Below are positions 10,058 through 20,262 of a stretch of DNA of 64,000 nt, one piece after another; within the stretch, counting starts at the first letter, position 1, and every line of letters begins with the position of its first letter. Position numbers and translations under genes: made by a program. The notes under the pieces are model-generated. The model worked only from the letters and a program-made list of their open reading frames with translations, was not told the DNA's origin and ran no database searches. Where the stretch lies: assembly GCA_001179505.1 (NCBI GenBank), contig CDMY01000356.1, positions 310,001 through 374,000 on the forward strand. Reading direction: 5' to 3'. Source of the stretch: Vitrella brassicaformis CCMP3155 (lineage: Eukaryota; Protista; Chromerida).

Positions 10058-10328
10058 GATGGATTCTCCACGGCGGGCGAATGCGATTTTTTCTTTTGAC
10101 CTGTCGCTTCTCCTTGCCTTGCGGGGAAACAGCCGCTTCTTTGCGTGAAAGACATGGGTTAGCCGCCAGCGCCTAGGTTATTCCGTGAAACTGCTCCCGT
10201 TGCGACGGGACAATCACAACACTCTACTCGCAGAGGGAGATCTGCCAAGATCTTTGGCTTCCCCTGGTGCCCTTCCACCTCCCCTTGCATCACGAAAGCG
10301 CCACAGCCTCTGATCTTTGTCTTTCGCA

Positions 10329-11078
10329 ATGCAAGACGGCCCGGCTTGTCGTTCTCCGCTGACAGTGGTGACCCTGAATGTCTACATGGACGGCTGGAGG
10401 CACCTGTGTGCCCGCCACACCATCTCGTTCATCGAGCACTCTGACGCCGACATCATCTGCCTGCAGGAGACCAACGAGGACTGGGAGAGGACCCTTAATG
10501 CCCGGCCGGCCATCAGGCAGCGCTTCCCCTACGTCAGCTTCACGCACGACAAGTGGAGGCAGGGCGGGCTGGCCTTTTTGTCCAAGCTGCCGATGTCGGC
10601 TGTGGGCGTGTTGCCCCGCCTCTACACTAACTGGTACTTCGCCTGCCGCGTGACCGTCCACCCGCCGTCCGATGCAGCCATGCCGCCCTTCCAGATCATC
10701 CAGGTGCACTTGAAGGCTCCCGTGCCATCGGTGCCCATCCTCGTGCAGCAGCAGCGGGGACACGAGATCCGCTCCCATATGGGCGCGTACACGCCGTCGC
10801 TCCCCGCTATCGTCCTGGGGGACTTCAACTGCTCTACTGGGCCGGCAATGCGCTTCATGACAGCTGAGATGGGCTTCACCAACTGTCTGCTGGATGGTGC
10901 TCGACAGCAGAGGAGGGGCAGGACGACGTGGAAGGGGTGCTGTGCGAAGACGCTGTGTTGTGCGCCGCAGCTGTTCGATCACATATTTGTGAAGGGGTTT
11001 GATGTGGTGGATTGTCGTGTGCTGCATGAGGGGGGGTCAGACCACTGGCCGGTTCAGGCCAGAGTGATCATATCATGA
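10329..11078 (+). CDS. Endonuclease/exonuclease/phosphatase (EEP) family protein, intronless
   Basis: All EEP motifs in order: VTLNV, DIICLQE, GLAFLSK, VHL, VLGDFN, FDHIFV, SDHWPV. First ATG at 10329; single 750-nt ORF. Confidence 0.93.
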   Translation: MQDGPACRSPLTVVTLNVYMDGWRHLCARHTISFIEHSDADIICLQETNEDWERTLNARPAIRQRFPYVSFTHDKWRQGGLAFLSKLPMSAVGVLPRLYTNWYFACRVTVHPPSDAAMPPFQIIQVHLKAPVPSVPILVQQQRGHEIRSHMGAYTPSLPAIVLGDFNCSTGPAMRFMTAEMGFTNCLLDGARQQRRGRTTWKGCCAKTLCCAPQLFDHIFVKGFDVVDCRVLHEGGSDHWPVQARVIIS

Positions 11079-11836: not shown

Positions 11837-14800
11837 TCAACAGTGCACCGGCCAGCATCCACGCAGCTGAGACAGAATGGACTGATGGCCAGCAGAGCAC
11901 TGGTGTGTCACATCAGAGACAGCAGAGCAAACGAGACACCGCTATCGTACGAACATTTTACACACACACACAGAGACACACACTCACCCCACGTCCACCC
12001 CCATCCCACCAACCCGAAATCTCGCGTGTGGGTCCTCCTCAGAGTAGAGAATGTCGGATGCTTCGCTCGTGCCGAGCAGCACCTCACACGACTTCTTGAG
12101 CTCGTCGGCAATCTCCATTCGCTCCGGTTCACCGCTGGGGATTGACGACATGTGGAGGGCCATGAGTCCAAGGTCGTCCACGTCGAACGACCGCCGTTGC
12201 CGCGAATACTCAAGAACCTCACGCATGGCCGTATGGCCCTCCTCGTCCCGCCAATTGGCGTACAGCATGGACACACGCATGTGCAGCATCCTCGTTATTA
12301 GGGGGGTATCGACATTCAGTTCGCGGACTCTCCGGAGCATCTGCTCCAGCTCACGTAGCGCACTCTCCGCGTGCGTGAGGGACAGCCGCCGCAGCTGCTG
12401 CTCCACTTCTTCCATGACTGACGTCGCCCGCGAGCTGTACTGGGGCCCAGGGACCTGGTGGCGACTTGCCATGTCCCTCCAGCTGGCGAGAGAGATAAAG
12501 GTATCGCTCAAATAGGACACCGTGACCTCGCTGCCCGTGGGAATGGGGCGCACTGCACGCACGATCATGACCCCATCGACCACATACCTGTGTGAACCGG
12601 ACAAGACATACATGTGTGAAAGAAGCAAGAAGATTCCCTGTCATTGCCACGTTAGTCGCCTACCAGATCGCGTTGCGCTCCGCGCCGGCATGACTGGATT
12701 GCGAGGGCAACGGCCACAGGCCCACTGCAGGCCAAGACCACACACAGTGTGAAGCCGTGCATTGCATCTTCCCGTGCCTTGTTTTCTCACCCGTCACAGA
12801 CGGGACGAGGGAGGTGTCAATGACATCATCAACCACGCGAGTGTTAAAGTCGAGCAGCTGGCGGAGGCGATCGGTGGTCCAGTAGCCCCGCTGCACGACA
12901 GGCTGACCGAACTCTTCTCCTGCCGGCGAATCCATGAACCTCGGCAGAAGGGGAAACTCCACAGTCAGCCCAAGACACGTATCCAGCGTCAACGCCATGG
13001 CCGAGGGCTGTCCCTTGCTAAGCGGCAAGCAGCACAGCTGAGAGAGCAGCCGAGGGTGCCAACCATCACACGCGGCCACTAACTGGGGCAGCATCCGCTG
13101 AGATACCAGCCGCTCCAACAGCCGCCCTTGGATGCCTTCTGTGGGCGCTTGCACTGCGATGACGGCCTTCTGGACGATCAAAAGCTGCCCGGGCTGGATG
13201 TTCTCTGTGGCGATGAGGCAGGGCTGTCTGTTGGGTGCGTGTTGGATGGCGACCGGGCCGACGTACTCGCCCACGTCGATTGGCGTCGTCGACTTGCCGG
13301 GCGGCGTGTTTCGCGCGTTGCCCTTTGCATGTCGATAAATCGCCGCCCAGTCGTACACGCCGCTGGCATTGGCCATGTGAGTGTGGATGCGCTGCTGCAG
13401 CGCGTTGGCCTCTGTCGTCATCTGACCCTCCAAACCCTGGTAAGAAAAACACGAAAAGCGTCAATCGTCATCAATGTCCCCTTTTGATTCATTTGCGTCG
13501 TATCATATCGTCTTACATTGTCGCCGAGTGCCTTGGTGACTGCGTCGGCAGCATCGAACAGCCGCTCCGACAGCAGCCCGTGGCCCAGCAGAATGAGCGT
13601 CTTCTGCTGGATATCACTCAGCTGCTCGCAGGGCGCCTGCAGGGAGCTCAGATGAAAGGCGGCGGCAGCACAGCCAACAGCGTCCGGCCCTCCCTCCTTG
13701 ATGAGCTCCGGCTTGAGCAGACATGCAGCCGCGTTGCTGAGCAGCGCCACAAGGGTCTCCACATCAGCAGTAGCCAGACCAGCCGTAAGGACGTCGCGCG
13801 CCTCGGCGTACCTCTCAACCCCCTGCAGCATCTCGCCCTCCGCCAGCGCGTCCGCTACTTGCCGCGGGCTGCCTGGCATCTGCCGCTCTGTCGAGCAGAG
13901 TTTCGCCATAGCGTTCTTCATCAGTGCCGCGATCGCTTCCTTCGATGGCAAGACGACGTCAGCCGCACGGCGTCGACCCTGTCGACGCCTCCCTGGGCCG
14001 GCGCAAAGCTGCTCGATCAGGCCCTTGTACAGTCCCACAGCCGTGCACTGAATGGTGGCGCATTTGCTGCCAGGGTCGACGGATGGGAGAGGCGGAAGGA
14101 TGCGGAGGACGGTCGTCACGTCGAGGAAGGCGTCAAGGTAGCCCTCGACACCGATAAGGCACTGGGCGCGGCGCACGAGCAGCTCGCCGAGAGTCTCCCG
14201 CTCCATTCGGATACCCTGCAGCCCACAGTCAGAGATCACAGCAGCATCGTGGGTTGAAGACGCTCTTCGCGTGCACGTGTTCAGCCCCCCACCTGCAGAT
14301 ATGCCCGATAGGCGTCGAGATGTTTGTCACGCTTAAAAAGGTCGTTTCCTGTGGCTCTCCACTTGTCGGCAGGGGAGTGGACAACGGCAGCTGCACTCGG
14401 AGCGGAGGTCGCAGCACCCCTGCCAAGAGCAGACAAGCCACAGACGATGCGCACAAAGAAGAGGCGGTCATAGCGTGTATCGATTGAGTGTTTCGTTTAC
14501 GTGCTGGCAGTGGACGAAGAAGATGGACGTGCGCCCTCATTGAGCGCTGCAGACGACCGGCTGCGCGCACCACAGCCACGAAGAGGCAGGACGGCATTCT
14601 TCTGCATCCACAGTGAAGGCGCTTCTGGTCTTCCCTACCTTGTGGATGCAGCAGTAGTGGGCAGGGACGCTTCACTCGGCTCAGAATGACCCGCATTTCT
14701 GGATGCAGGCCGCTGTGCCCGGCCGGTGCCGCCCTCGTCCTTGGCCCCTTCACCCGGGTTGCCTTCCCTCTCACTGTTGCGCTGCTGCATTTCTTCCTGG

Positions 14801-16993
14801 ATCTCGTGCACGAAACTGCGCGCCCGTTGCCGAAAGGGAGTGTCTGCCGCCAGTCTGTCGACGGATGCACCGTGTCGCAGCAGCGCGCGAATGATCTCCT
14901 TCTGTCGCTCGATCTTCGTTGGTGGGGCCCTCTGCTCGCAGAGCTGGTCCGTGAGACGGTACGCGGCCTGGCCCAATGCTGTGGCTCCCTGCCCCGGTCC
15001 ACTCCGAAAGTTGAGGTTGATCTCACCAGGTCGGAGCCGCTCACACAGCCACTTCACCACCGGGAGGCCGGCATCACCACAGGAGACGGCCATGACGAGT
15101 GGCGTCGTCCCATCATCGGCTGTGGCATCAGAGGAGGCACCATAGGCCGTCAGCAGGTCCAGGTACGAACGAATGAATGCTGATGACAACGTGGGTGAGG
15201 CTTGAGAGGCCATGTGCATGGCCGTCGTTCCAGAGAGGCGTCCGCTGGCGAGTGCACGGTCATGCTCAAACAGTAGGCGATAGACCTCGAGGAGTGCCGC
15301 CTCATAGGGAGGGCTGGGCTGCGATGGGGCTGCCGCCTTCGGGCTGAAGTTAGCAAGGGCCAGGCCCATGGATAGCATGATTCCCTGATCCTGTGATGAG
15401 ATCAGCGGTGCATCGTCATACTCATTGCGGACCGCCGCCCCGTTCTCGAGCAGCACCTCAGTCGCGGTGACGTTGGCGCACTGATGGGCCACGCTAAGAG
15501 GACATACGCCTTCTTCGATGCCGGCGTTGACTTTTGCACCATTAGCGATGAGTGCCCGCAGGACCTCACGCTGCACTTGACAAGTGGGCCAGGGAGGAAG
15601 GCGCAGCTGCTGCGTCACAGCGGACCAAGTGGCCGGGCAGCTGTTGAACGGGTCATCAACAGCGAGGCAGAGGACACTCACACGCACTGGCCCGGAACCG
15701 CCCAGCACGAGCCAGTATGGCAGCGCCACTGGCTCCCGAGCTGGCTCCCTGCCCATGCCGACAGCGGTCTCTGGGTCAGCGCCGTCCCCGCACAGCCGCC
15801 ACACGTCGGGGCCAGCCAGTGTACGGCACACGGTCCGACATAGTAGCTCTTGAGACGCAGAGGCACTTGTGGCCGTGGATGCGCGGCAAGCGACCTCGAA
15901 GCTCGCCACTGATAGGCCCTGGGATCGAAGCAGGCTCTCCACCTGCTCCAAATGCGGAGCATCGACACCTCTCGCGGAAGCCTGGAAACCAGCACGCAAC
16001 CGGTACAGAGCACATCCATTTATTCCCAGCAATATGCGGCAACCCGCACCTTGATGCCTTCTGGCGGTACTGAGAGTTCGGACAAAGGCAAAGACTTGTC
16101 ACACGGAGATGCATCCGCGAATCGAGTACCCAAAGGCATACTGACACACATGGAAGCGAGAACGAGTTCTCTCGGCTGGCCACATTGTGCGACGGTGGTG
16201 CACGGCACGGCTTACCAGAAGAGCCCCGCAGATGGAGAAGAAGACGGATTAGTGTCATCCAACGGACTGAGGAACCGAAGGAGTGAGGGTTGTTTGGCAT
16301 CGACATAGAGTACTCCCTTCGCGAGTGCCTGCTGACCTGGGTGCAGACCGCGGCTGCCGTCCACTGCCCCGCCGGCCCCCTGCGCTGCTGCTCATCGCTT
16401 TGCTCGCCTTTCGCTGCCCGGCGCCCTCCGCTGCTCGTGCCTCTCGTGGCTGCTTGGTGCTGGTGCTGCTTGTGGCCTCGATGCCCTCTGTATGTAGGGG
16501 CGCGGGCGGGGCGGCAGATGACGACGATGATGATGAGGGGGTCTCACTCTCAGGAGCTGCGGACGGATCGCAGGCATCCTGGAGCACGCGTGTACGAGCC
16601 CTTCTGGCTGCACTTCTCACGGAGCTCCGTTCGAAGTCCGACAGGCTGCCGCGAAGGATCGAGAGCATGCTGATACACCCCTCTGTCAACTCCGCAAAGC
16701 GCACTGCGCCAGCCCACACAACAGGCAGGTCGGCCGAGCCGAATGCATCGTGGGCGCGAGATGCAGACCCACGCGCTCGCCGCCAATGCGACACGACGCC
16801 TGAGATGCCACTCTCAGCTGGCGCGTAGCGAAGTCCTCTTCAGTAGAGCGCAGGCGAAGTCCTCTTCCGTGGTCCTCAAAAAGCGCCAGGATGAAGCGCA
16901 CAGCAGTGGTGAGAGGCAGGGGGCTGTCGGCTTGTGGTGCATGTGGTGCAGCATCGCAGCGAGCGGCTCTCTCAGTGTCCACAGCGCCTGCCA

Positions 16994-17030
<37 letters not shown>

Positions 17031-20000
17031 GAAACGTAGAGTACGCGGCCGGTGCCCGTTCCCGGCCTGTGTACACACCTGGAATGCCACGCAGGTAGCC
17101 CAGCAGCCTGGATTCCTTGCCGGTGAAGCTGCACTCACTCCGATTAGCACACGTTTTCCAGACAGATGAGGCCATGACGCCATCCACCAATACCCGACCG
17201 GCCGTCATAGCCGCCTGCAACGCCTCACCCGTCGGCTCGGCCGCCCATTGCGTGTGCTGCAGGCCGGCAAGCTCCCACTCGAAGCCGATCGTATCCACCT
17301 GCCCACCCGCAGTGGAAGCCTTCTTGGCCACTTTGACTGTGATCGCTTCCTGACCCTCCCGTGTTAGTGCCTTCCTGGCCGATTTCCTCATGGCCTGGGC
17401 CGTGTTTGTCGCCTCCTTGACTTGCGCCGAGACCTGCTGCTGCTGCTGCTGATGCTGCAGGGCGGATGACGATGGGCACTCGATCACCGGGGGAAGGCAT
17501 GGGGTGGACGGGGATAGAGAAGGGGGGCACGACATGGCCAGCTCCTCCTGTGGTGCGCACAGCTGCAGACCCATCTCTCGCTGGATGCCCAACACCAAGC
17601 TGCGCAATTGCCGTTGCCCAGGGGTGTCAGTGCGCATACAGCCCACCGATGCACCGTGCTGAAGCAGCACACGGATGATTTCTCTCCGAATGCCGACCTT
17701 GCTCCCATCGACAGGCTTGACTTTGTGCTGCTGTGCGAGGCCGACGGCAGCCTCCTCGAGAGCTGTCATCATGTATGGCCTCCCACTGGTGACGTCCGAC
17801 GGGCCGAGCAGCGAGCACCACTGATGGACAACGGATGACGACACGCGGGCGGCGTTGATCTCCGCAGTGTCCAGCCGCTCACACAGCCAGGCAACCGCAC
17901 TGGGCGCACCCCAAGACACAGCCATGTCCAGGGGCGTCTGGCCTCCGCTGTTCCTCCCAGTCAGAGAGCCGCCGTACCGCAAAAACAACTCGAGGTAGCC
18001 GAGTATGAAGGCCGCTGGGTACGCTCGTGAGGCCATGCACGCCATGTGCAAGGCGCCCTCTCCGTCACACGCCTCGTTGACCAGGGCTGGATCATGGTCG
18101 AAGAGACGGCTGCATATGGTCACAAAGGCTTCCTGATAGCGGGCGCTCAGCTGAATCACGAATAGCCGGGCATTTGTACTAGTGATGGACGCTGCCCAGG
18201 ACTCATTGAGCGGCGGACACACGAGCTCATCCAGCCCATCCAGCCCTCGCACAGCTGCACCGTGGGCGAGCAGCACCTCCACAGCCGTCTTGTTGGCACA
18301 AAGAACGGCAACACGGAGCGGCCGCCGAGTTTCGTCGAGCCCTGCAGGCCGGCAGCCGTCCACATCCGCACCAGCAGCGATGAGTGCCTCGAGCACCGAC
18401 CGCTGCAGCTCTCGTGAGGTCCACACTGGCAGCTTGAGCTGCCGGCCGCCATGGTGCTCAACGACGGGAGGCGCGTCATTGGTTTCATCGTCGATAGCAA
18501 GCGAGAGTATGCTGATCCCGGTCGCCAGCTGTCCGACCCAGTAGCCAGGGCCCACACGCAGCTGGACACCCAGGTCGGCCCTCGCGCCGGCTTCATGCAG
18601 ACGCATCACACCATCAGCTGAGGTAAAAGAACGACCCATGATGCGGTAGGCGAGTTCGCGGCCGGCGGGGCTGTCATCGCCATGTGGTGCGCAGGCCGTA
18701 TCCCTGTGGCTGCAGCAGCTCCCGCAAAGTGCGCTCGTACACGGGCTCCGGCGTGTCTTGCGTGGTGGGGAAGGCACCAGGGGCAGATCGGATCCTGTCA
18801 AGACGCATGACGCAGGAAGGTGAGCCGGGCTGTGACTATGGTGCAGCGTTTACCGAGGAGGATCAACTGCAGAGGAAGAGGCAGGTGGCTGCTCGGCCGT
18901 GTCGCTCTTGACGGCACCAGTCCGTACACTTAAGTGACAGCACAGTCAAGTGACAGACCACCCCGCGCACGCCCACTCACTCGTGTGTGTGTGTCTTCCC
19001 ACCTGCTGCCAGGGGCAGGCGGCGGCTCGACTGGGGCGCTCAGCTGGCTGTGCATCTCATTCTGGATGTCCTGCACGAGCCTGTGCGGAATGTCCTCCTT
19101 TCGACCGCTTCTGCGCATCAGCTGGATGTCGGCACCGTTGCTGAGCAGTGCGCGGATGACTTGCTTGGCCCTATCGATCTGCTGCAGTGGAGCCCTCGCT
19201 CTCAGCTGGTCACTAAGATGACTGTCAGCCGCCGTCAGTGGCGTTGTGCCCCCCAACGGATGGCTCTTGTCGATCTCACTGGTGCCGAGCTGCTCCAACA
19301 GCCACTCCACCACATCGCCACCGCCCTGAACCACGGCGTAGTCGAAGGGCGTACAGCCCTTGGCGTCCTTCGCGATGAGATCGGCGCCGTGGGCCGCGAG
19401 TAGGTCCAGGTAGCTGTGCATGAAATCTGGCGATAGTGAAAGCGACGAATTCTCCACAGCGATCCAGTGCATGGGAGTGTTGCCCTCATCGGTATGTTCG
19501 CTGGCCACCGTGGGGTCCTTCTGAAGCAGTTGGCGATAGACCTCCAGCAGGGCAGGCTCATATTGGGGGCTCGGCGAGAATGGACGGTCGCTCAATCGGA
19601 AGAAAGCCAGCCGCATCCCGCGTACAGCCGCACCATGGGCGAGCAGCACCTCCACAGCCGTCACATTGGGCGTACAACACGGCCACTCGAAGGGGTGTGA
19701 TTTCACACGGACGGCCGTCCACACCCGCACCAGCAGCGATGAGCGCCTCGAGCACCTCCCGCTGCAGCTCTCGCGAGGGCCACAATGGCAGCTTGAGCTG
19801 CCGGCCGGCCGCGATGAGTGGAGGAGCACTATTGATGTCATCGATGGCCAGGCAGAGGATGCTGCTGAATATCGTCAGGTGTTTGCCTTCTGGATGGTCC
19901 GTCTCCAACTGGACGGCGATACTCGGGTCAGCTCCGCCCTCACGACAGAGCCTCGACACGTCGTCGCCTGATCTGGCGGTGCGGCACAGCATTGAGGTCG

Positions 20001-20262
20001 TCAGCTGCCGGCTTTGAGGGCTCTGGTTCCTGCCGAGAATCGCGCCGAGAGAAAGGCCCTGCCGCGAGAGCAGGTCGTCCAACTGCCTCTCATCTGAATA
20101 CTCCTCCTCAGTCTGCAGAATGAATGAACCACACAGCAGAATCAAGAAGGCCTTTGTTGTCATTCATTTTACCGGGCCAGATGAAGGCATGTGGGTGGGT
20201 GGTGGCTGAGAAGATGCGGCCGCCTCTTGGCGCCCACCAAACAACCCAAGCAGCGACTGCAT
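11837..20262 (-). CDS. Giant multidomain protein: 3x ankyrin module, possible winged-helix, TPRs, degenerate SET, Cys/His tail; two frameshifts in the 5' half
   Basis: 16-exon GT-AG model: 20262-20173, 20112-19003, 18928-18854, 18794-17079, 16987-16769, 16703-16337, 16266-16216, 16140-16050, 15981-14639, 14560-14501, 14419-14293, 14215-13517, 13436-12791, 12724-12664, 12587-12014, 11941-11837. All junctions are phase-compatible, except that exons 2 and 4 each carry a net +1 nt. Total 7334 nt. Confidence 0.7.
12500..13330 (-). other. Degenerate SET domain (SMYD/TPR-SET type)
   Basis: DVGEYVGPVAIQHAPNRQPCLIATENIQPGQLLIVQKA ... VGLWPLPSQSSHAGAERNAIWYVVDGVMIVRAVRPIPTGSEVTVSY aligns to the SET consensus (GRGLFA..dI..Gelil.Ek ... 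GL...S..NHSC.PN ... MIVRA.RdI..GEEi..SY). GRGL has become QPCL and NHSC has become SHAG. Confidence 0.75.
13517..14419 (-). other. TPR region of the giant gene
   Basis: ADKWRATGNDLFKRDKHLDAYRAYLQ|GIRME...LLVRRAQCLIGVEGYLDAFLD and GEMLQGVERYAEARDVLTAGL...LLSNAAACLLK match TPR helix-pair patterns. Confidence 0.8.
14800..15981 (-). other. Ankyrin module C
   Basis: LRLPPWPTCQVQREVLRALIANGAKVN...CPLSVAHQCANVTATEVLLENGA, GTTAMHMA, GTTPLVMAVSCG, ATALGQAA...IIRALLRHGA. Colinear with modules A and B. Confidence 0.85.
17590..18794 (-). other. Ankyrin module B, with a frameshift at about 18683-18686 in its N-terminal part
   Basis: YERTLRELLQPQGYGLRTT shifts into HGDDSPAGRELAYRIMGR. Ankyrin motifs follow: RPLRVAVLCANKTAVEVLLAHGA, GEGALHMAC, GQTPLDMAVSWG, TALEEAA...IIRVLLQHGA. 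Confidence 0.8.
19003..20112 (-). pseudogene. Ankyrin module A, split by a +1 frameshift at about 19668-19670
   Basis: LPLWPSRELQREVLEALIAAGAGVDG...TPLRVAVLYA continues as NVTAVEVLLAHGAAVRG...GNTPMHW...GCTPFDYAV...GTTPLTAA only after skipping one extra base (TAC GCC C AAT). Confidence 0.75.

What the first reader, a model, noticed from the sequence alone, without database searches (positions are those of the whole stretch)
11837..20262. Hidden ~2,440-codon gene fusing three ankyrin modules with TPRs and a SET domain
Seen in sequence: five or more apparently separate ORFs are joined by small linker exons (75, 51, 91 and 60 nt). Every GT-AG junction is phase-compatible. Apparent ORF stops, such as the TAG at 14635, fall inside splice donors (ACAAG|GTAG). 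The product reads Ank-A, Ank-B, helical/wHTH-like region, Ank-C, TPR, TPR, SET, Cys/His tail. Established knowledge: TPR+SET(+MYND) is the SMYD-like layout, and ankyrin+SET occurs in G9a/GLP with a different architecture. Inference: I do not recognise three colinear ankyrin modules fused to a TPR-SET unit from any described protein. It could be a lineage-specific scaffold or sensor built by module accretion.
Basis: partly seen in the sequence, partly recalled or inferred. Interest (0 to 1): 0.8.

Follow-up and report, generated by a model that had tools for sequence, protein, structure and literature searches.

The report
Broken three-ankyrin TPR-SET fusion gene
In the alga Vitrella brassicaformis, three ankyrin-repeat modules, TPR repeats and a SMYD-like SET methyltransferase fold do lie in one colinear, splice-compatible unit, but three single-base lesions cut its reading frame, so as assembled only the already annotated last part (1,246 residues) can be made.

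Summary
On the minus strand lie ANK-A, a 75-nt exon, ANK-B, a family-specific linker, ANK-C, TPR-like repeats, a SMYD/AKMT-like SET fold and a helical tail.

Everything from 16395 to 11987 is already the annotated Vitrella protein CEM05233.1 (1,246 aa).

The upstream extension has comparative support. Five paralogous loci keep the same order. Two are annotated as single proteins of 1,954 and 1,989 aa. One paralog has a spliced transcript joining ANK, linker, TPR and SET. The 75-nt exon is conserved in stand-alone paralogs and links A to B in their conserved frames.

The frame is not intact. Three 1-nt lesions (about 19669, 18674-18699 and 16753) put the first stop at codon 215. No good alternative splice site bypasses them.

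Most likely this is a recently fused, now decaying member of a Vitrella-only family. The scan met this family before on other DNA (s1-205711, s1-205555). The "Cys/His tail" is not there. No RNA from this locus could be reached.

The parts
20173..20262 (-).
   Evidence: Donor CCG|GTAAAA scores 4.5 and the acceptor before 20112 scores 4.8, both weak to moderate. There is no homology or RNA support, so this is unverified.
19003..20112 (-). ANK-A module exon; lesion 1 is one extra C in the run 19670-19668
   Evidence: Pfam Ank_2 E 1.8e-8. Six paralog copies lack the extra base. Closest paralogs are 50-52% identical. The donor at 19003 scores 9.2 and is conserved in paralogs.
18854..18928 (-). 75-nt linker exon, homologous to a conserved 72-nt exon of stand-alone A-type paralogs
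   Evidence: DNA alignment with L015, L013, L027 and L014. Its own splice sites are weak (acceptor 1.3, donor 3.4). It keeps A's conserved frame in phase with B's conserved frame.
17079..18794 (-). ANK-B module exon plus the start of the family-specific linker; lesion 2 is a frame change between 18699 and 18674; annotated only from 18606 as a 609-aa protein (P0009)
   Evidence: Pfam Ank_2 E 5.8e-10. The acceptor at 18794 scores 8.8. The N-terminal motif lies in one frame and the body in another. The ancestral ATG of B-type paralogs reads TTC here.
16337..16987 (-). Linker-region exon; lesion 3 is a 1-nt deletion at about 16753 that separates annotated P0009 from CEM05233.1
   Evidence: Four paralogs carry one more base at this site. 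The region is colinear with residues 499-742 of the continuous paralog protein P0004. The acceptor at 16987 scores 15.2.
16216..16266 (-). 51-nt exon
   Evidence: Exon of CEM05233.1. The same 51-nt exon occurs in paralog P0004 and in transcript L011.
16050..16140 (-). 91-nt exon
   Evidence: Exon of CEM05233.1. Counterparts of 76, 91 and 96 nt occur in paralogs.
14639..15981 (-). ANK-C module exon
   Evidence: Pfam Ank_2 E 9.3e-11. AlphaFold model of residues 60-545: pLDDT 78.8, pTM 0.77. Foldseek top hits are DARPins, ankyrin-1, AnkB and RNase L ANK (E about 1e-6).
14501..14560 (-). 60-nt exon
   Evidence: Exon of CEM05233.1. A 60-nt exon sits at the same place in P0004, P0012 and P0013.
13517..14419 (-). 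TPR-like helical region (two exons, 14419-14293 and 14215-13517)
   Evidence: Family profile against PDB: CNS1 TPR E 1.6e-3. VIA-align: Tah1 Z 12.4, rmsd 3.3 over 94 residues. There is no Pfam TPR hit for this copy.
11984..13436 (-). SMYD/AKMT-like split SET domain plus C-terminal helical domain (exons 13436-12791, 12724-12664, 12587-11987); stop TGA at 11986-11984
   Evidence: Pfam SET E 0.0048, below threshold, for CEM05233.1; E 3.5e-8 for paralog P0008. Profile against PDB: AKMT 1.2e-4, SMYD3 1.4e-4. Foldseek: SMYD2 3.9e-7. VIA-align: SMYD2/3 Z about 17, AKMT Z 16.1.

Best explanation
The locus is a member of a Vitrella-only gene family. Its intact form reads ANK solenoid, family-specific linker, ANK solenoid, TPR-like repeats, then a zinc-less SMYD/AKMT-like SET domain with a helical tail. 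Here a stand-alone ankyrin gene (A) appears to have been fused in frame onto the 5' end of such a gene. A kept its conserved donor and 72/75-nt exon and lost its last exon. B lost its start codon. That made a 14-exon unit of about 2,441 codons. Three single-base lesions have since broken the frame, in A, at the start of B and in the linker. Translation from the 5' end would stop at codon 215. The annotated B (609 aa) and C-TPR-SET (1,246 aa) models both begin at internal methionines just downstream of a lesion. The upstream two thirds are therefore most likely a young pseudogene relic. The ANK-C-TPR-SET part may still be made if it has its own start site. By inference, in intact relatives the ANK solenoids and the TPR recruit partners and the SET fold methylates lysines of non-histone targets, as SMYD and AKMT enzymes do. 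Whether this SET is still active is open.
For: Domains.

Exon model and frame walk: 13 GT..AG introns, first stop at codon 215. With frame bookkeeping at three sites, only the terminal stop at 11986 remains.

Lesions: lesion 1 is absent from six paralog copies and lesion 3 from four. Lesion 2 is seen at protein level against four module N-termini.

One ancestral gene from B to SET: five loci keep the same order. P0004 (1,954 aa) and P0012 (1,989 aa) have the same exon pattern. The window is colinear with P0004. Transcript L011 joins B-type ANK, linker, TPR and SET on one spliced RNA.

A-B fusion: conserved donor and exon, strong donor at 19003 and acceptor at 18794, ATG to TTC, and only about 125 nt between A's stop and the first in-frame ATG of B's conserved frame (18808).

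Lesions probably real: the assembly is Illumina/velvet corrected with ICORN (PMC4501334). In the paralog, four frame breaks lie inside exons that are 100% identical between the transcript contig (its coding part is also on record as an MMETSP transcript) and the genome. No good alternative splice site bypasses any lesion.
Against: No RNA or read data for this locus could be reached, so transcript extent, start sites and the reality of the three lesions are untested. The 2,441 codons contain no nonsense codon apart from those caused by the frameshifts, which would also fit an intact gene with assembly errors. Lesion 2 rests on short protein alignments (E 0.002-0.015). The 75-nt exon's own splice sites are weak. 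The annotators, who used RNA-seq intron hints, called separate genes.
Confidence: 0.6

Rival explanations
1. The gene is intact. The three single-base lesions are assembly or polishing errors, and Vitrella makes the full ~2,441-residue protein with three ANK solenoids, TPR and SET.
For: With three one-base adjustments the whole path is open, with no other stop. Splice sites and exon phases are preserved. Two lesions lie at short C runs. Other notes of this scan report similar small lesions in concatenated Vitrella genes (s1-221654, s1-218446), which could hint at a systematic artefact.
Against: The assembly is Illumina-only, built with velvet and corrected with three rounds of ICORN, so three indels within 3 kb would be very unusual. 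The C runs are only 3 nt long. In the paralog, frame breaks are identical in the transcript contig and in the genome. No protein of 344-1,094 aa derived from a B transcript, and none of 685-2,180 aa from a C-TPR-SET transcript, was found for this locus.
Confidence: 0.15
2. This is a tandem array of separately transcribed genes: A alone, B with the linker, and C-TPR-SET. The phase-compatible chain between A and B is a coincidence, or a relic that never worked.
For: The public annotation has separate models (P0009 of 609 aa, CEM05233.1 of 1,246 aa). More than 100 stand-alone single-module ANK genes exist in the genome. An A-type module directly upstream of a B-type module is seen only here. There is an in-frame ATG at 18808 for B.
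Against: Both annotated models start at internal methionines inside conserved sequence, just after a lesion. B to C is continuous in two paralog proteins and on one paralog transcript. About 125 nt between A's stop and the first in-frame ATG of B's conserved frame (18808) leaves no room for a 3' UTR plus a promoter (the paralog's UTRs run to hundreds of nt). A lacks the last exon of its stand-alone relatives.
Confidence: 0.2

Closest known systems
Vitrella paralogs CEM18269.1 (A0A0G4FTQ0, 1,954 aa) and the 1,989-aa protein P0012, both 'SET domain-containing protein', uncharacterised
   Same: Same order (ANK, linker, ANK, TPR-like, SET, helical tail) and the same exon pattern, including the 51-, 60- and 61-nt exons. 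They are 52-55% identical to CEM05233.1.
   Different: They have two ANK modules and one open frame. The window has a third module (A) upstream and three frame breaks.
SMYD1/2/3 lysine methyltransferases
   Same: Split SET domain followed by a TPR-like C-terminal domain. VIA-align Z about 17 over about 300 residues covering nearly the whole SMYD chain. Foldseek E 4e-7.
   Different: No MYND zinc finger and no post-SET cysteine cluster (no CxxC). NHSC reads SHAG. The glycine loop GxG reads NRQP. ANK and N-terminal TPR additions are present.
Toxoplasma gondii AKMT (PDB 6FND)
   Same: Best sequence-profile match (E 1.2e-4) and Z 16.1. It comes from the sister lineage. AKMT also lacks the Asn of NHSC (it reads AHSC in the alignment).
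   Different: AKMT keeps the HxC motif called a hallmark of active SET enzymes in PMC13518913. It has no ANK modules.
Toxoplasma PCKMT (probably the protein named AKMT2 in PMC12819142)
   Same: A described lysine methyltransferase built from TPR, ankyrin and SET domains (PMC13518913). PMC12819142 describes a SET-domain methyltransferase, AKMT2, bound to formin 1 in the preconoidal ring.
   Different: The domain order appears different (TPR, SET, ankyrin, proline-rich). No sequence match was detected with the family profile. It has an active HxC motif. That PCKMT and AKMT2 are the same protein is my inference. Homology to the Vitrella family was not shown here.
G9a/GLP (EHMT) ankyrin + SET histone methyltransferases
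   Same: Ankyrin repeats and a SET domain in one chain (my own knowledge, not tested here).
   Different: Pre-SET/post-SET zinc clusters, a different SET subclass, one ANK block, no TPR.

Membership tests
SET domain (Pfam PF00856) | Score above Pfam's gathering threshold (22.4 bits) | tested here: not met
   CEM05233.1 scores 17.7 bits, E 0.0048. Exon pieces alone give E 0.043. Paralog P0008 passes (34.2 bits, E 3.5e-8) and aligns along the whole unit.
SET domain (Pfam PF00856) | SET fold | tested here: met
   AlphaFold model (mean pLDDT 58, blocks mostly 50-90 in the SET core with long low-confidence insertions, and 80-94 in the helical tail). Foldseek SMYD2 E 3.9e-7. VIA-align Z 17.2 with 306 residues aligned.
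SET domain (Pfam PF00856) | Cofactor and catalytic motifs: glycine loop, N-H-x-C, catalytic Tyr | tested here: inconclusive
   The glycine loop reads NRQP (paralog P0008 has GKGRG). NHSC reads SHAG: His is invariant in the family, Asn and Cys are lost. Tyr in EVTVSY is kept. Activity cannot be judged from sequence.
SMYD family | MYND zinc finger inserted in the SET domain | tested here: not met
   No CxxC motif anywhere in residues 831-1246. The insert is not Cys-rich.
SMYD family | Split SET plus C-terminal TPR-like helical domain | tested here: met
   The alignment covers SMYD residues about 3-432 and model residues 324-688.
SMYD family | Post-SET zinc-binding cysteines | tested here: not met
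No Cys between the catalytic Tyr and the helical tail. There is 1 Cys in the last 171 residues.
Ankyrin repeat | Pfam Ank families above threshold, and a solenoid fold | tested here: met
   Three separate modules exceed the Ank_2 threshold. The module C model (pLDDT 78.8) matches ANK solenoids over 330-450 columns.
TPR | TPR motif match and helical-hairpin fold | tested here: inconclusive
   No Pfam TPR hit for this copy. Paralog P0007 gives TPR_2 at E 0.081. Family profile against CNS1 TPR E 1.6e-3. Tah1 Z 12.4 over 94 residues, a range where helical repeats can match by chance.
Vitrella ANK-linker-ANK-TPR-SET family (archetype CEM18269.1) | Colinear domain order, shared exon pattern and an open frame | tested here: inconclusive
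   Order and exon pattern are met. The open frame is not met: three lesions.

The most novel reading that the evidence does not exclude
The three lesions are artefacts, and Vitrella really makes a ~2,441-residue protein. In it a recently captured third ankyrin solenoid has been spliced, through a conserved 75-nt exon, onto a two-ANK, TPR, zinc-less SMYD-like SET enzyme. That would be a gene fusion caught in the act, within a family that swaps ankyrin heads onto enzymatic tails.
Probability: 0.15. Interest if true: 0.55.

Novelty: new variant of a known kind. Interest (0 to 1): 0.35.

Why it matters
The locus shows how a lineage-specific family in a close free-living relative of apicomplexan parasites builds long proteins by adding ankyrin modules exon by exon onto a SMYD/AKMT-like methyltransferase unit. 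It also shows how quickly such constructs decay. It corrects the public annotation: two models start at internal methionines created by frameshifts. The family is a natural place to ask whether a SET fold without its zinc ligands and glycine loop still methylates. Apicomplexan relatives (AKMT, PCKMT) control motility, so intact Vitrella members are the ones worth testing, not this broken copy.

Tried and rejected
- **RNA for this locus.** Two scans of metagenome contigs, one with the linker piece and one with a family alignment, found no relative and not even the known paralog transcript. Exact look-ups of CEM05233.1, P0009 and two window ORFs found no contig. Protein searches returned only annotated models for this locus.
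- **Splicing rescue of the lesions.** In the zones around lesions 2 and 3 the only acceptors that score well, 18794 (8.8) and 16987 (15.2), lead into the pre-lesion frames. Acceptors that would bypass lesions 2 and 3 score 4.5 or less. No strong site lies inside A.
- **Cys/His tail and extension to 11837.** No support. The stop is at 11986 and paralogs end at the same place.
- **wHTH reading of the linker.** No Pfam hit and no Atlas lead. Too few sequences were available to fold, so it was not tested.
- **Joined model.** The joined 2,441-codon product was not sent to any search or fold tool. Searches went exon by exon or used database proteins.
Full report
**Source and setting.** The window is contig C356:310001-374000 of a 72.7-Mb, 1,064-contig genome. 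Database records identify its proteins as Vitrella brassicaformis CCMP3155. The finding lies on the minus strand.

**The observation.** Stop-to-stop frames on the minus strand and Pfam show three separate ankyrin modules:
- 19874-18933: Ank_2 E 1.8e-8
- 18849-16975: Ank_2 E 5.8e-10
- 16098-14638: Ank_2 E 9.3e-11

The pieces downstream gave no Pfam TPR hit. They gave only a sub-threshold SET hit (E 0.043).

A full HMMER scan of 1.84 billion representative proteins with the TPR-like piece found seven proteins. Six are annotated Vitrella proteins. The seventh, P0001, comes from a transcript contig (L011) that matches the Vitrella genome at 100%. One of the six, CEM05233.1 (1,246 aa, 'SET domain-containing protein'), maps at 100% onto the window.

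Its exons are 16395-16337, 16266-16216, 16140-16050, 15981-14639, 14560-14501, 14419-14293, 14215-13517, 13436-12791, 12724-12664 and 12587-11987. So is the TAG inside the donor at 14637-14635. Only the 75-nt exon and the 18854/18794 junction are new.

I added four upstream exons to the annotated ones: 20262-20173, 20112-19003, 18928-18854 and 18794-17079. I also extended the first annotated exon upstream, making it 16987-16337. All 13 introns are GT..AG and 59-91 nt long. Forty-two introns of this family are 63-137 nt long.

The length is not a multiple of three. Walking the frame from the ATG at 20262 gives the first stop at codon 215 (19560) and 68 in-frame stops in all. If the frame is merely re-registered at three places, only the terminal stop at 11986 remains. 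The three places are the C run 19670-19668, somewhere in 18699-18674, and about 16753.

This was bookkeeping in a script. The joined product was not printed, kept or sent to any tool.

**The three lesions.**
- Lesion 1 is one extra base in ANK-A. Six paralogous copies lack it.
- Lesion 3 is one missing base in the linker. Four paralogs have it. It is exactly what separates the annotated 609-aa ANK-B model from CEM05233.1. That model (P0009) runs 21 codons out of frame and then stops.
- Lesion 2 lies near the start of ANK-B. The conserved N-terminal motif (ERTLRELLQPQGYGL) is in one frame and the body (DSPAGRELAYRIMGRS...) is in another, in the order seen in four other module N-termini. This rests on short alignments (E 0.002-0.015) and is the weakest of the three.

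No plausible alternative splicing removes any lesion. In the zones around lesions 2 and 3, the only acceptors that score well (18794 at 8.8 and 16987 at 15.2) lead into the pre-lesion frames. There are no strong sites inside A.

**Is it one gene?** For ANK-B through SET the comparative case is strong.
- The TPR-SET unit occurs at about 12 loci, and the B-type module plus linker at five. At all five the order is ANK, linker, (ANK), TPR, SET.
- Two loci are annotated as single proteins of 1,954 aa (CEM18269.1) and 1,989 aa. Their exon pattern matches the window's.
- The window aligns colinearly with CEM18269.1 from 18675 to 12047.
- A 5,541-nt transcript contig (L011, JGI sample 3300017297) is a spliced RNA of the paralog at C292:53480-60328. 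Its coding part is also on record as an MMETSP transcript. It is 100% identical to the genome, exon by exon. It carries a B-type ANK, the linker, TPR and SET on one molecule.

**The A-B junction.** For ANK-A the case is moderate.
- The donor at 19003 and the 75-nt exon are homologous to a conserved donor and 72-nt exon of stand-alone A-type genes.
- Read in its conserved frame, the 75-nt exon joins A's conserved frame to B's conserved frame.
- The donor at 19003 (9.2) and the acceptor at 18794 (8.8) are as good as typical true sites. The exon's own sites are weak.
- A lacks the last exon of its relatives.
- The ATG of B-type paralogs reads TTC here.
- Only about 125 nt separate A's stop from the first in-frame ATG of B's conserved frame, at 18808.

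I read this as an in-frame fusion of an A-type gene onto a B-type gene by deletion.

**Are the lesions real?** I could not reach reads or RNA from this locus. Several indirect points favour real lesions:
- The assembly is Illumina HiSeq and velvet, with three rounds of ICORN correction (PMC4501334).
- In the paralog transcript L011, four frame breaks relative to CEM18269.1 lie inside exons that are 100% identical between the RNA contig and the genome. Transcribed, frame-broken copies therefore do exist in this family.
- Both annotated models in the window start at internal methionines inside conserved sequence, just downstream of a lesion.

Against this, the 2,441 codons hold no nonsense codon of their own. 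That also fits a very young pseudogene.

**What the parts are.**
- **ANK module.** An AlphaFold model of module C, built on 32 paralogs, has pLDDT 78.8 and pTM 0.77. It is an extended ankyrin solenoid: DARPins, ankyrin-1, AnkB and RNase L ANK match at E about 1e-6 over 330-450 columns.
- **TPR-SET unit.** The model, built on 9 paralogs, has pLDDT 58, with the helical tail at 80-94.
  - It matches SMYD2/3/1 and Toxoplasma AKMT by Foldseek (E 4e-7 to 3e-5).
  - By VIA-align the scores are Z 17.2 to 15.8, with about 300 residues aligned across nearly the whole SMYD chain.
  - The family profile hits AKMT (1.2e-4), SMYD3 (1.4e-4) and the TPR of CNS1 (1.6e-3).
  - Its first about 100 residues align to three-TPR proteins such as Tah1 (Z 12.4).
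- **Missing zinc features.** There is no MYND finger and there are no post-SET cysteines. NHSC reads SHAG and the glycine loop reads NRQP. The catalytic Tyr and the invariant His are kept.
- **Canonical paralog.** P0008 keeps GKGRG and NH and passes Pfam SET.
- **Linker.** It has no Pfam hit and is confined to about seven loci. I did not test the wHTH idea.
- **Tail.** The 'Cys/His tail' does not exist.

**How it most likely works.** By inference from SMYD and AKMT, in the intact relatives the ANK solenoids and the TPR are docking surfaces and the SET fold methylates lysines of non-histone partners. Activity is open because cofactor-loop residues have changed. At this locus only the annotated 1,246-aa ANK-C-TPR-SET protein could be made as written, and only if it has its own transcription or translation start.

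**Comparison with what is known.** A TPR + ankyrin + SET lysine methyltransferase is described in Toxoplasma: PCKMT (PMC13518913). A SET-domain methyltransferase called AKMT2 is described in the preconoidal ring (PMC12819142). That these are the same protein is my inference. The domain combination therefore has precedent in the sister lineage. The order differs, and I found no sequence link.

The scan has met this family before on other DNA of this genome:
- s1-205711: a zinc-less SMYD-like ANK-TPR-SET gene of 1,127 aa, in a family of about 13 copies.
- s1-205555: ankyrin heads on interchangeable tails.

My results agree with both.

**Verdict.** This is a new variant of a known kind, of modest interest.

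Noticed in passing
L011 (JGI 3300017297 contig, 5,541 nt), equal to G000:C292:53480-60328 minus strand: Spliced transcript of a paralog with B-type ANK, linker, TPR and SET but no ANK-C. It has four frame breaks relative to CEM18269.1, all inside exons 100% identical to the genome, so it is a transcribed, frame-broken copy.
   Followed up: partly
L011:1-306: The first ~300 nt of that transcript contig match many contigs of the genome at 91-98% (C1002, C901, C284, C74 and others). This is a dispersed repeat or a chimeric 5' end.
   Followed up: no
L016, L017, L019, L023, L025, L028, L030 and others (for example G000:C706:405-2132): A large family of ~600-aa single-exon ankyrin genes starts MAQ(P/S)SSAASQAPP. 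These genes share a nearly identical C-terminal body (motifs LAPQRDHSMLLARLLPLAPHH and FNEHLGDQDCQF), much more alike than their ANK parts.
   Followed up: no
G000:C499:119182-121728 (+), in L007/L009: A single 849-aa open frame holds two ANK modules joined by a ~60-residue linker and ends in a Lys-rich tail. Module concatenation within one exon also occurs in this family.
   Followed up: partly
G000:C412:51969-52292 and G000:C989:155678-156939: The family-specific linker domain (motif DTIGF...HTQWAA) also occurs at two loci outside the five ANK-TPR-SET loci.
   Followed up: no
window 10317-11078 (+): An ORF with a full-length Endonuclease/Exonuclease/phosphatase domain (Pfam E 1.4e-19) lies just downstream of the gene's 3' end. 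It could be a retroelement endonuclease or an ordinary gene.
   Followed up: no
window 17078-16988 (-): The intron between the ANK-B exon and the linker exon consists largely of a (CT)n(GT)n microsatellite that runs right up to a very strong acceptor.
   Followed up: no
window 18794-18740 (-) compared with L011:500-560: The window aligns to the spliced paralog mRNA across that paralog's first exon junction. The first intron of B-type genes therefore seems to be absent here (intron loss).
   Followed up: partly
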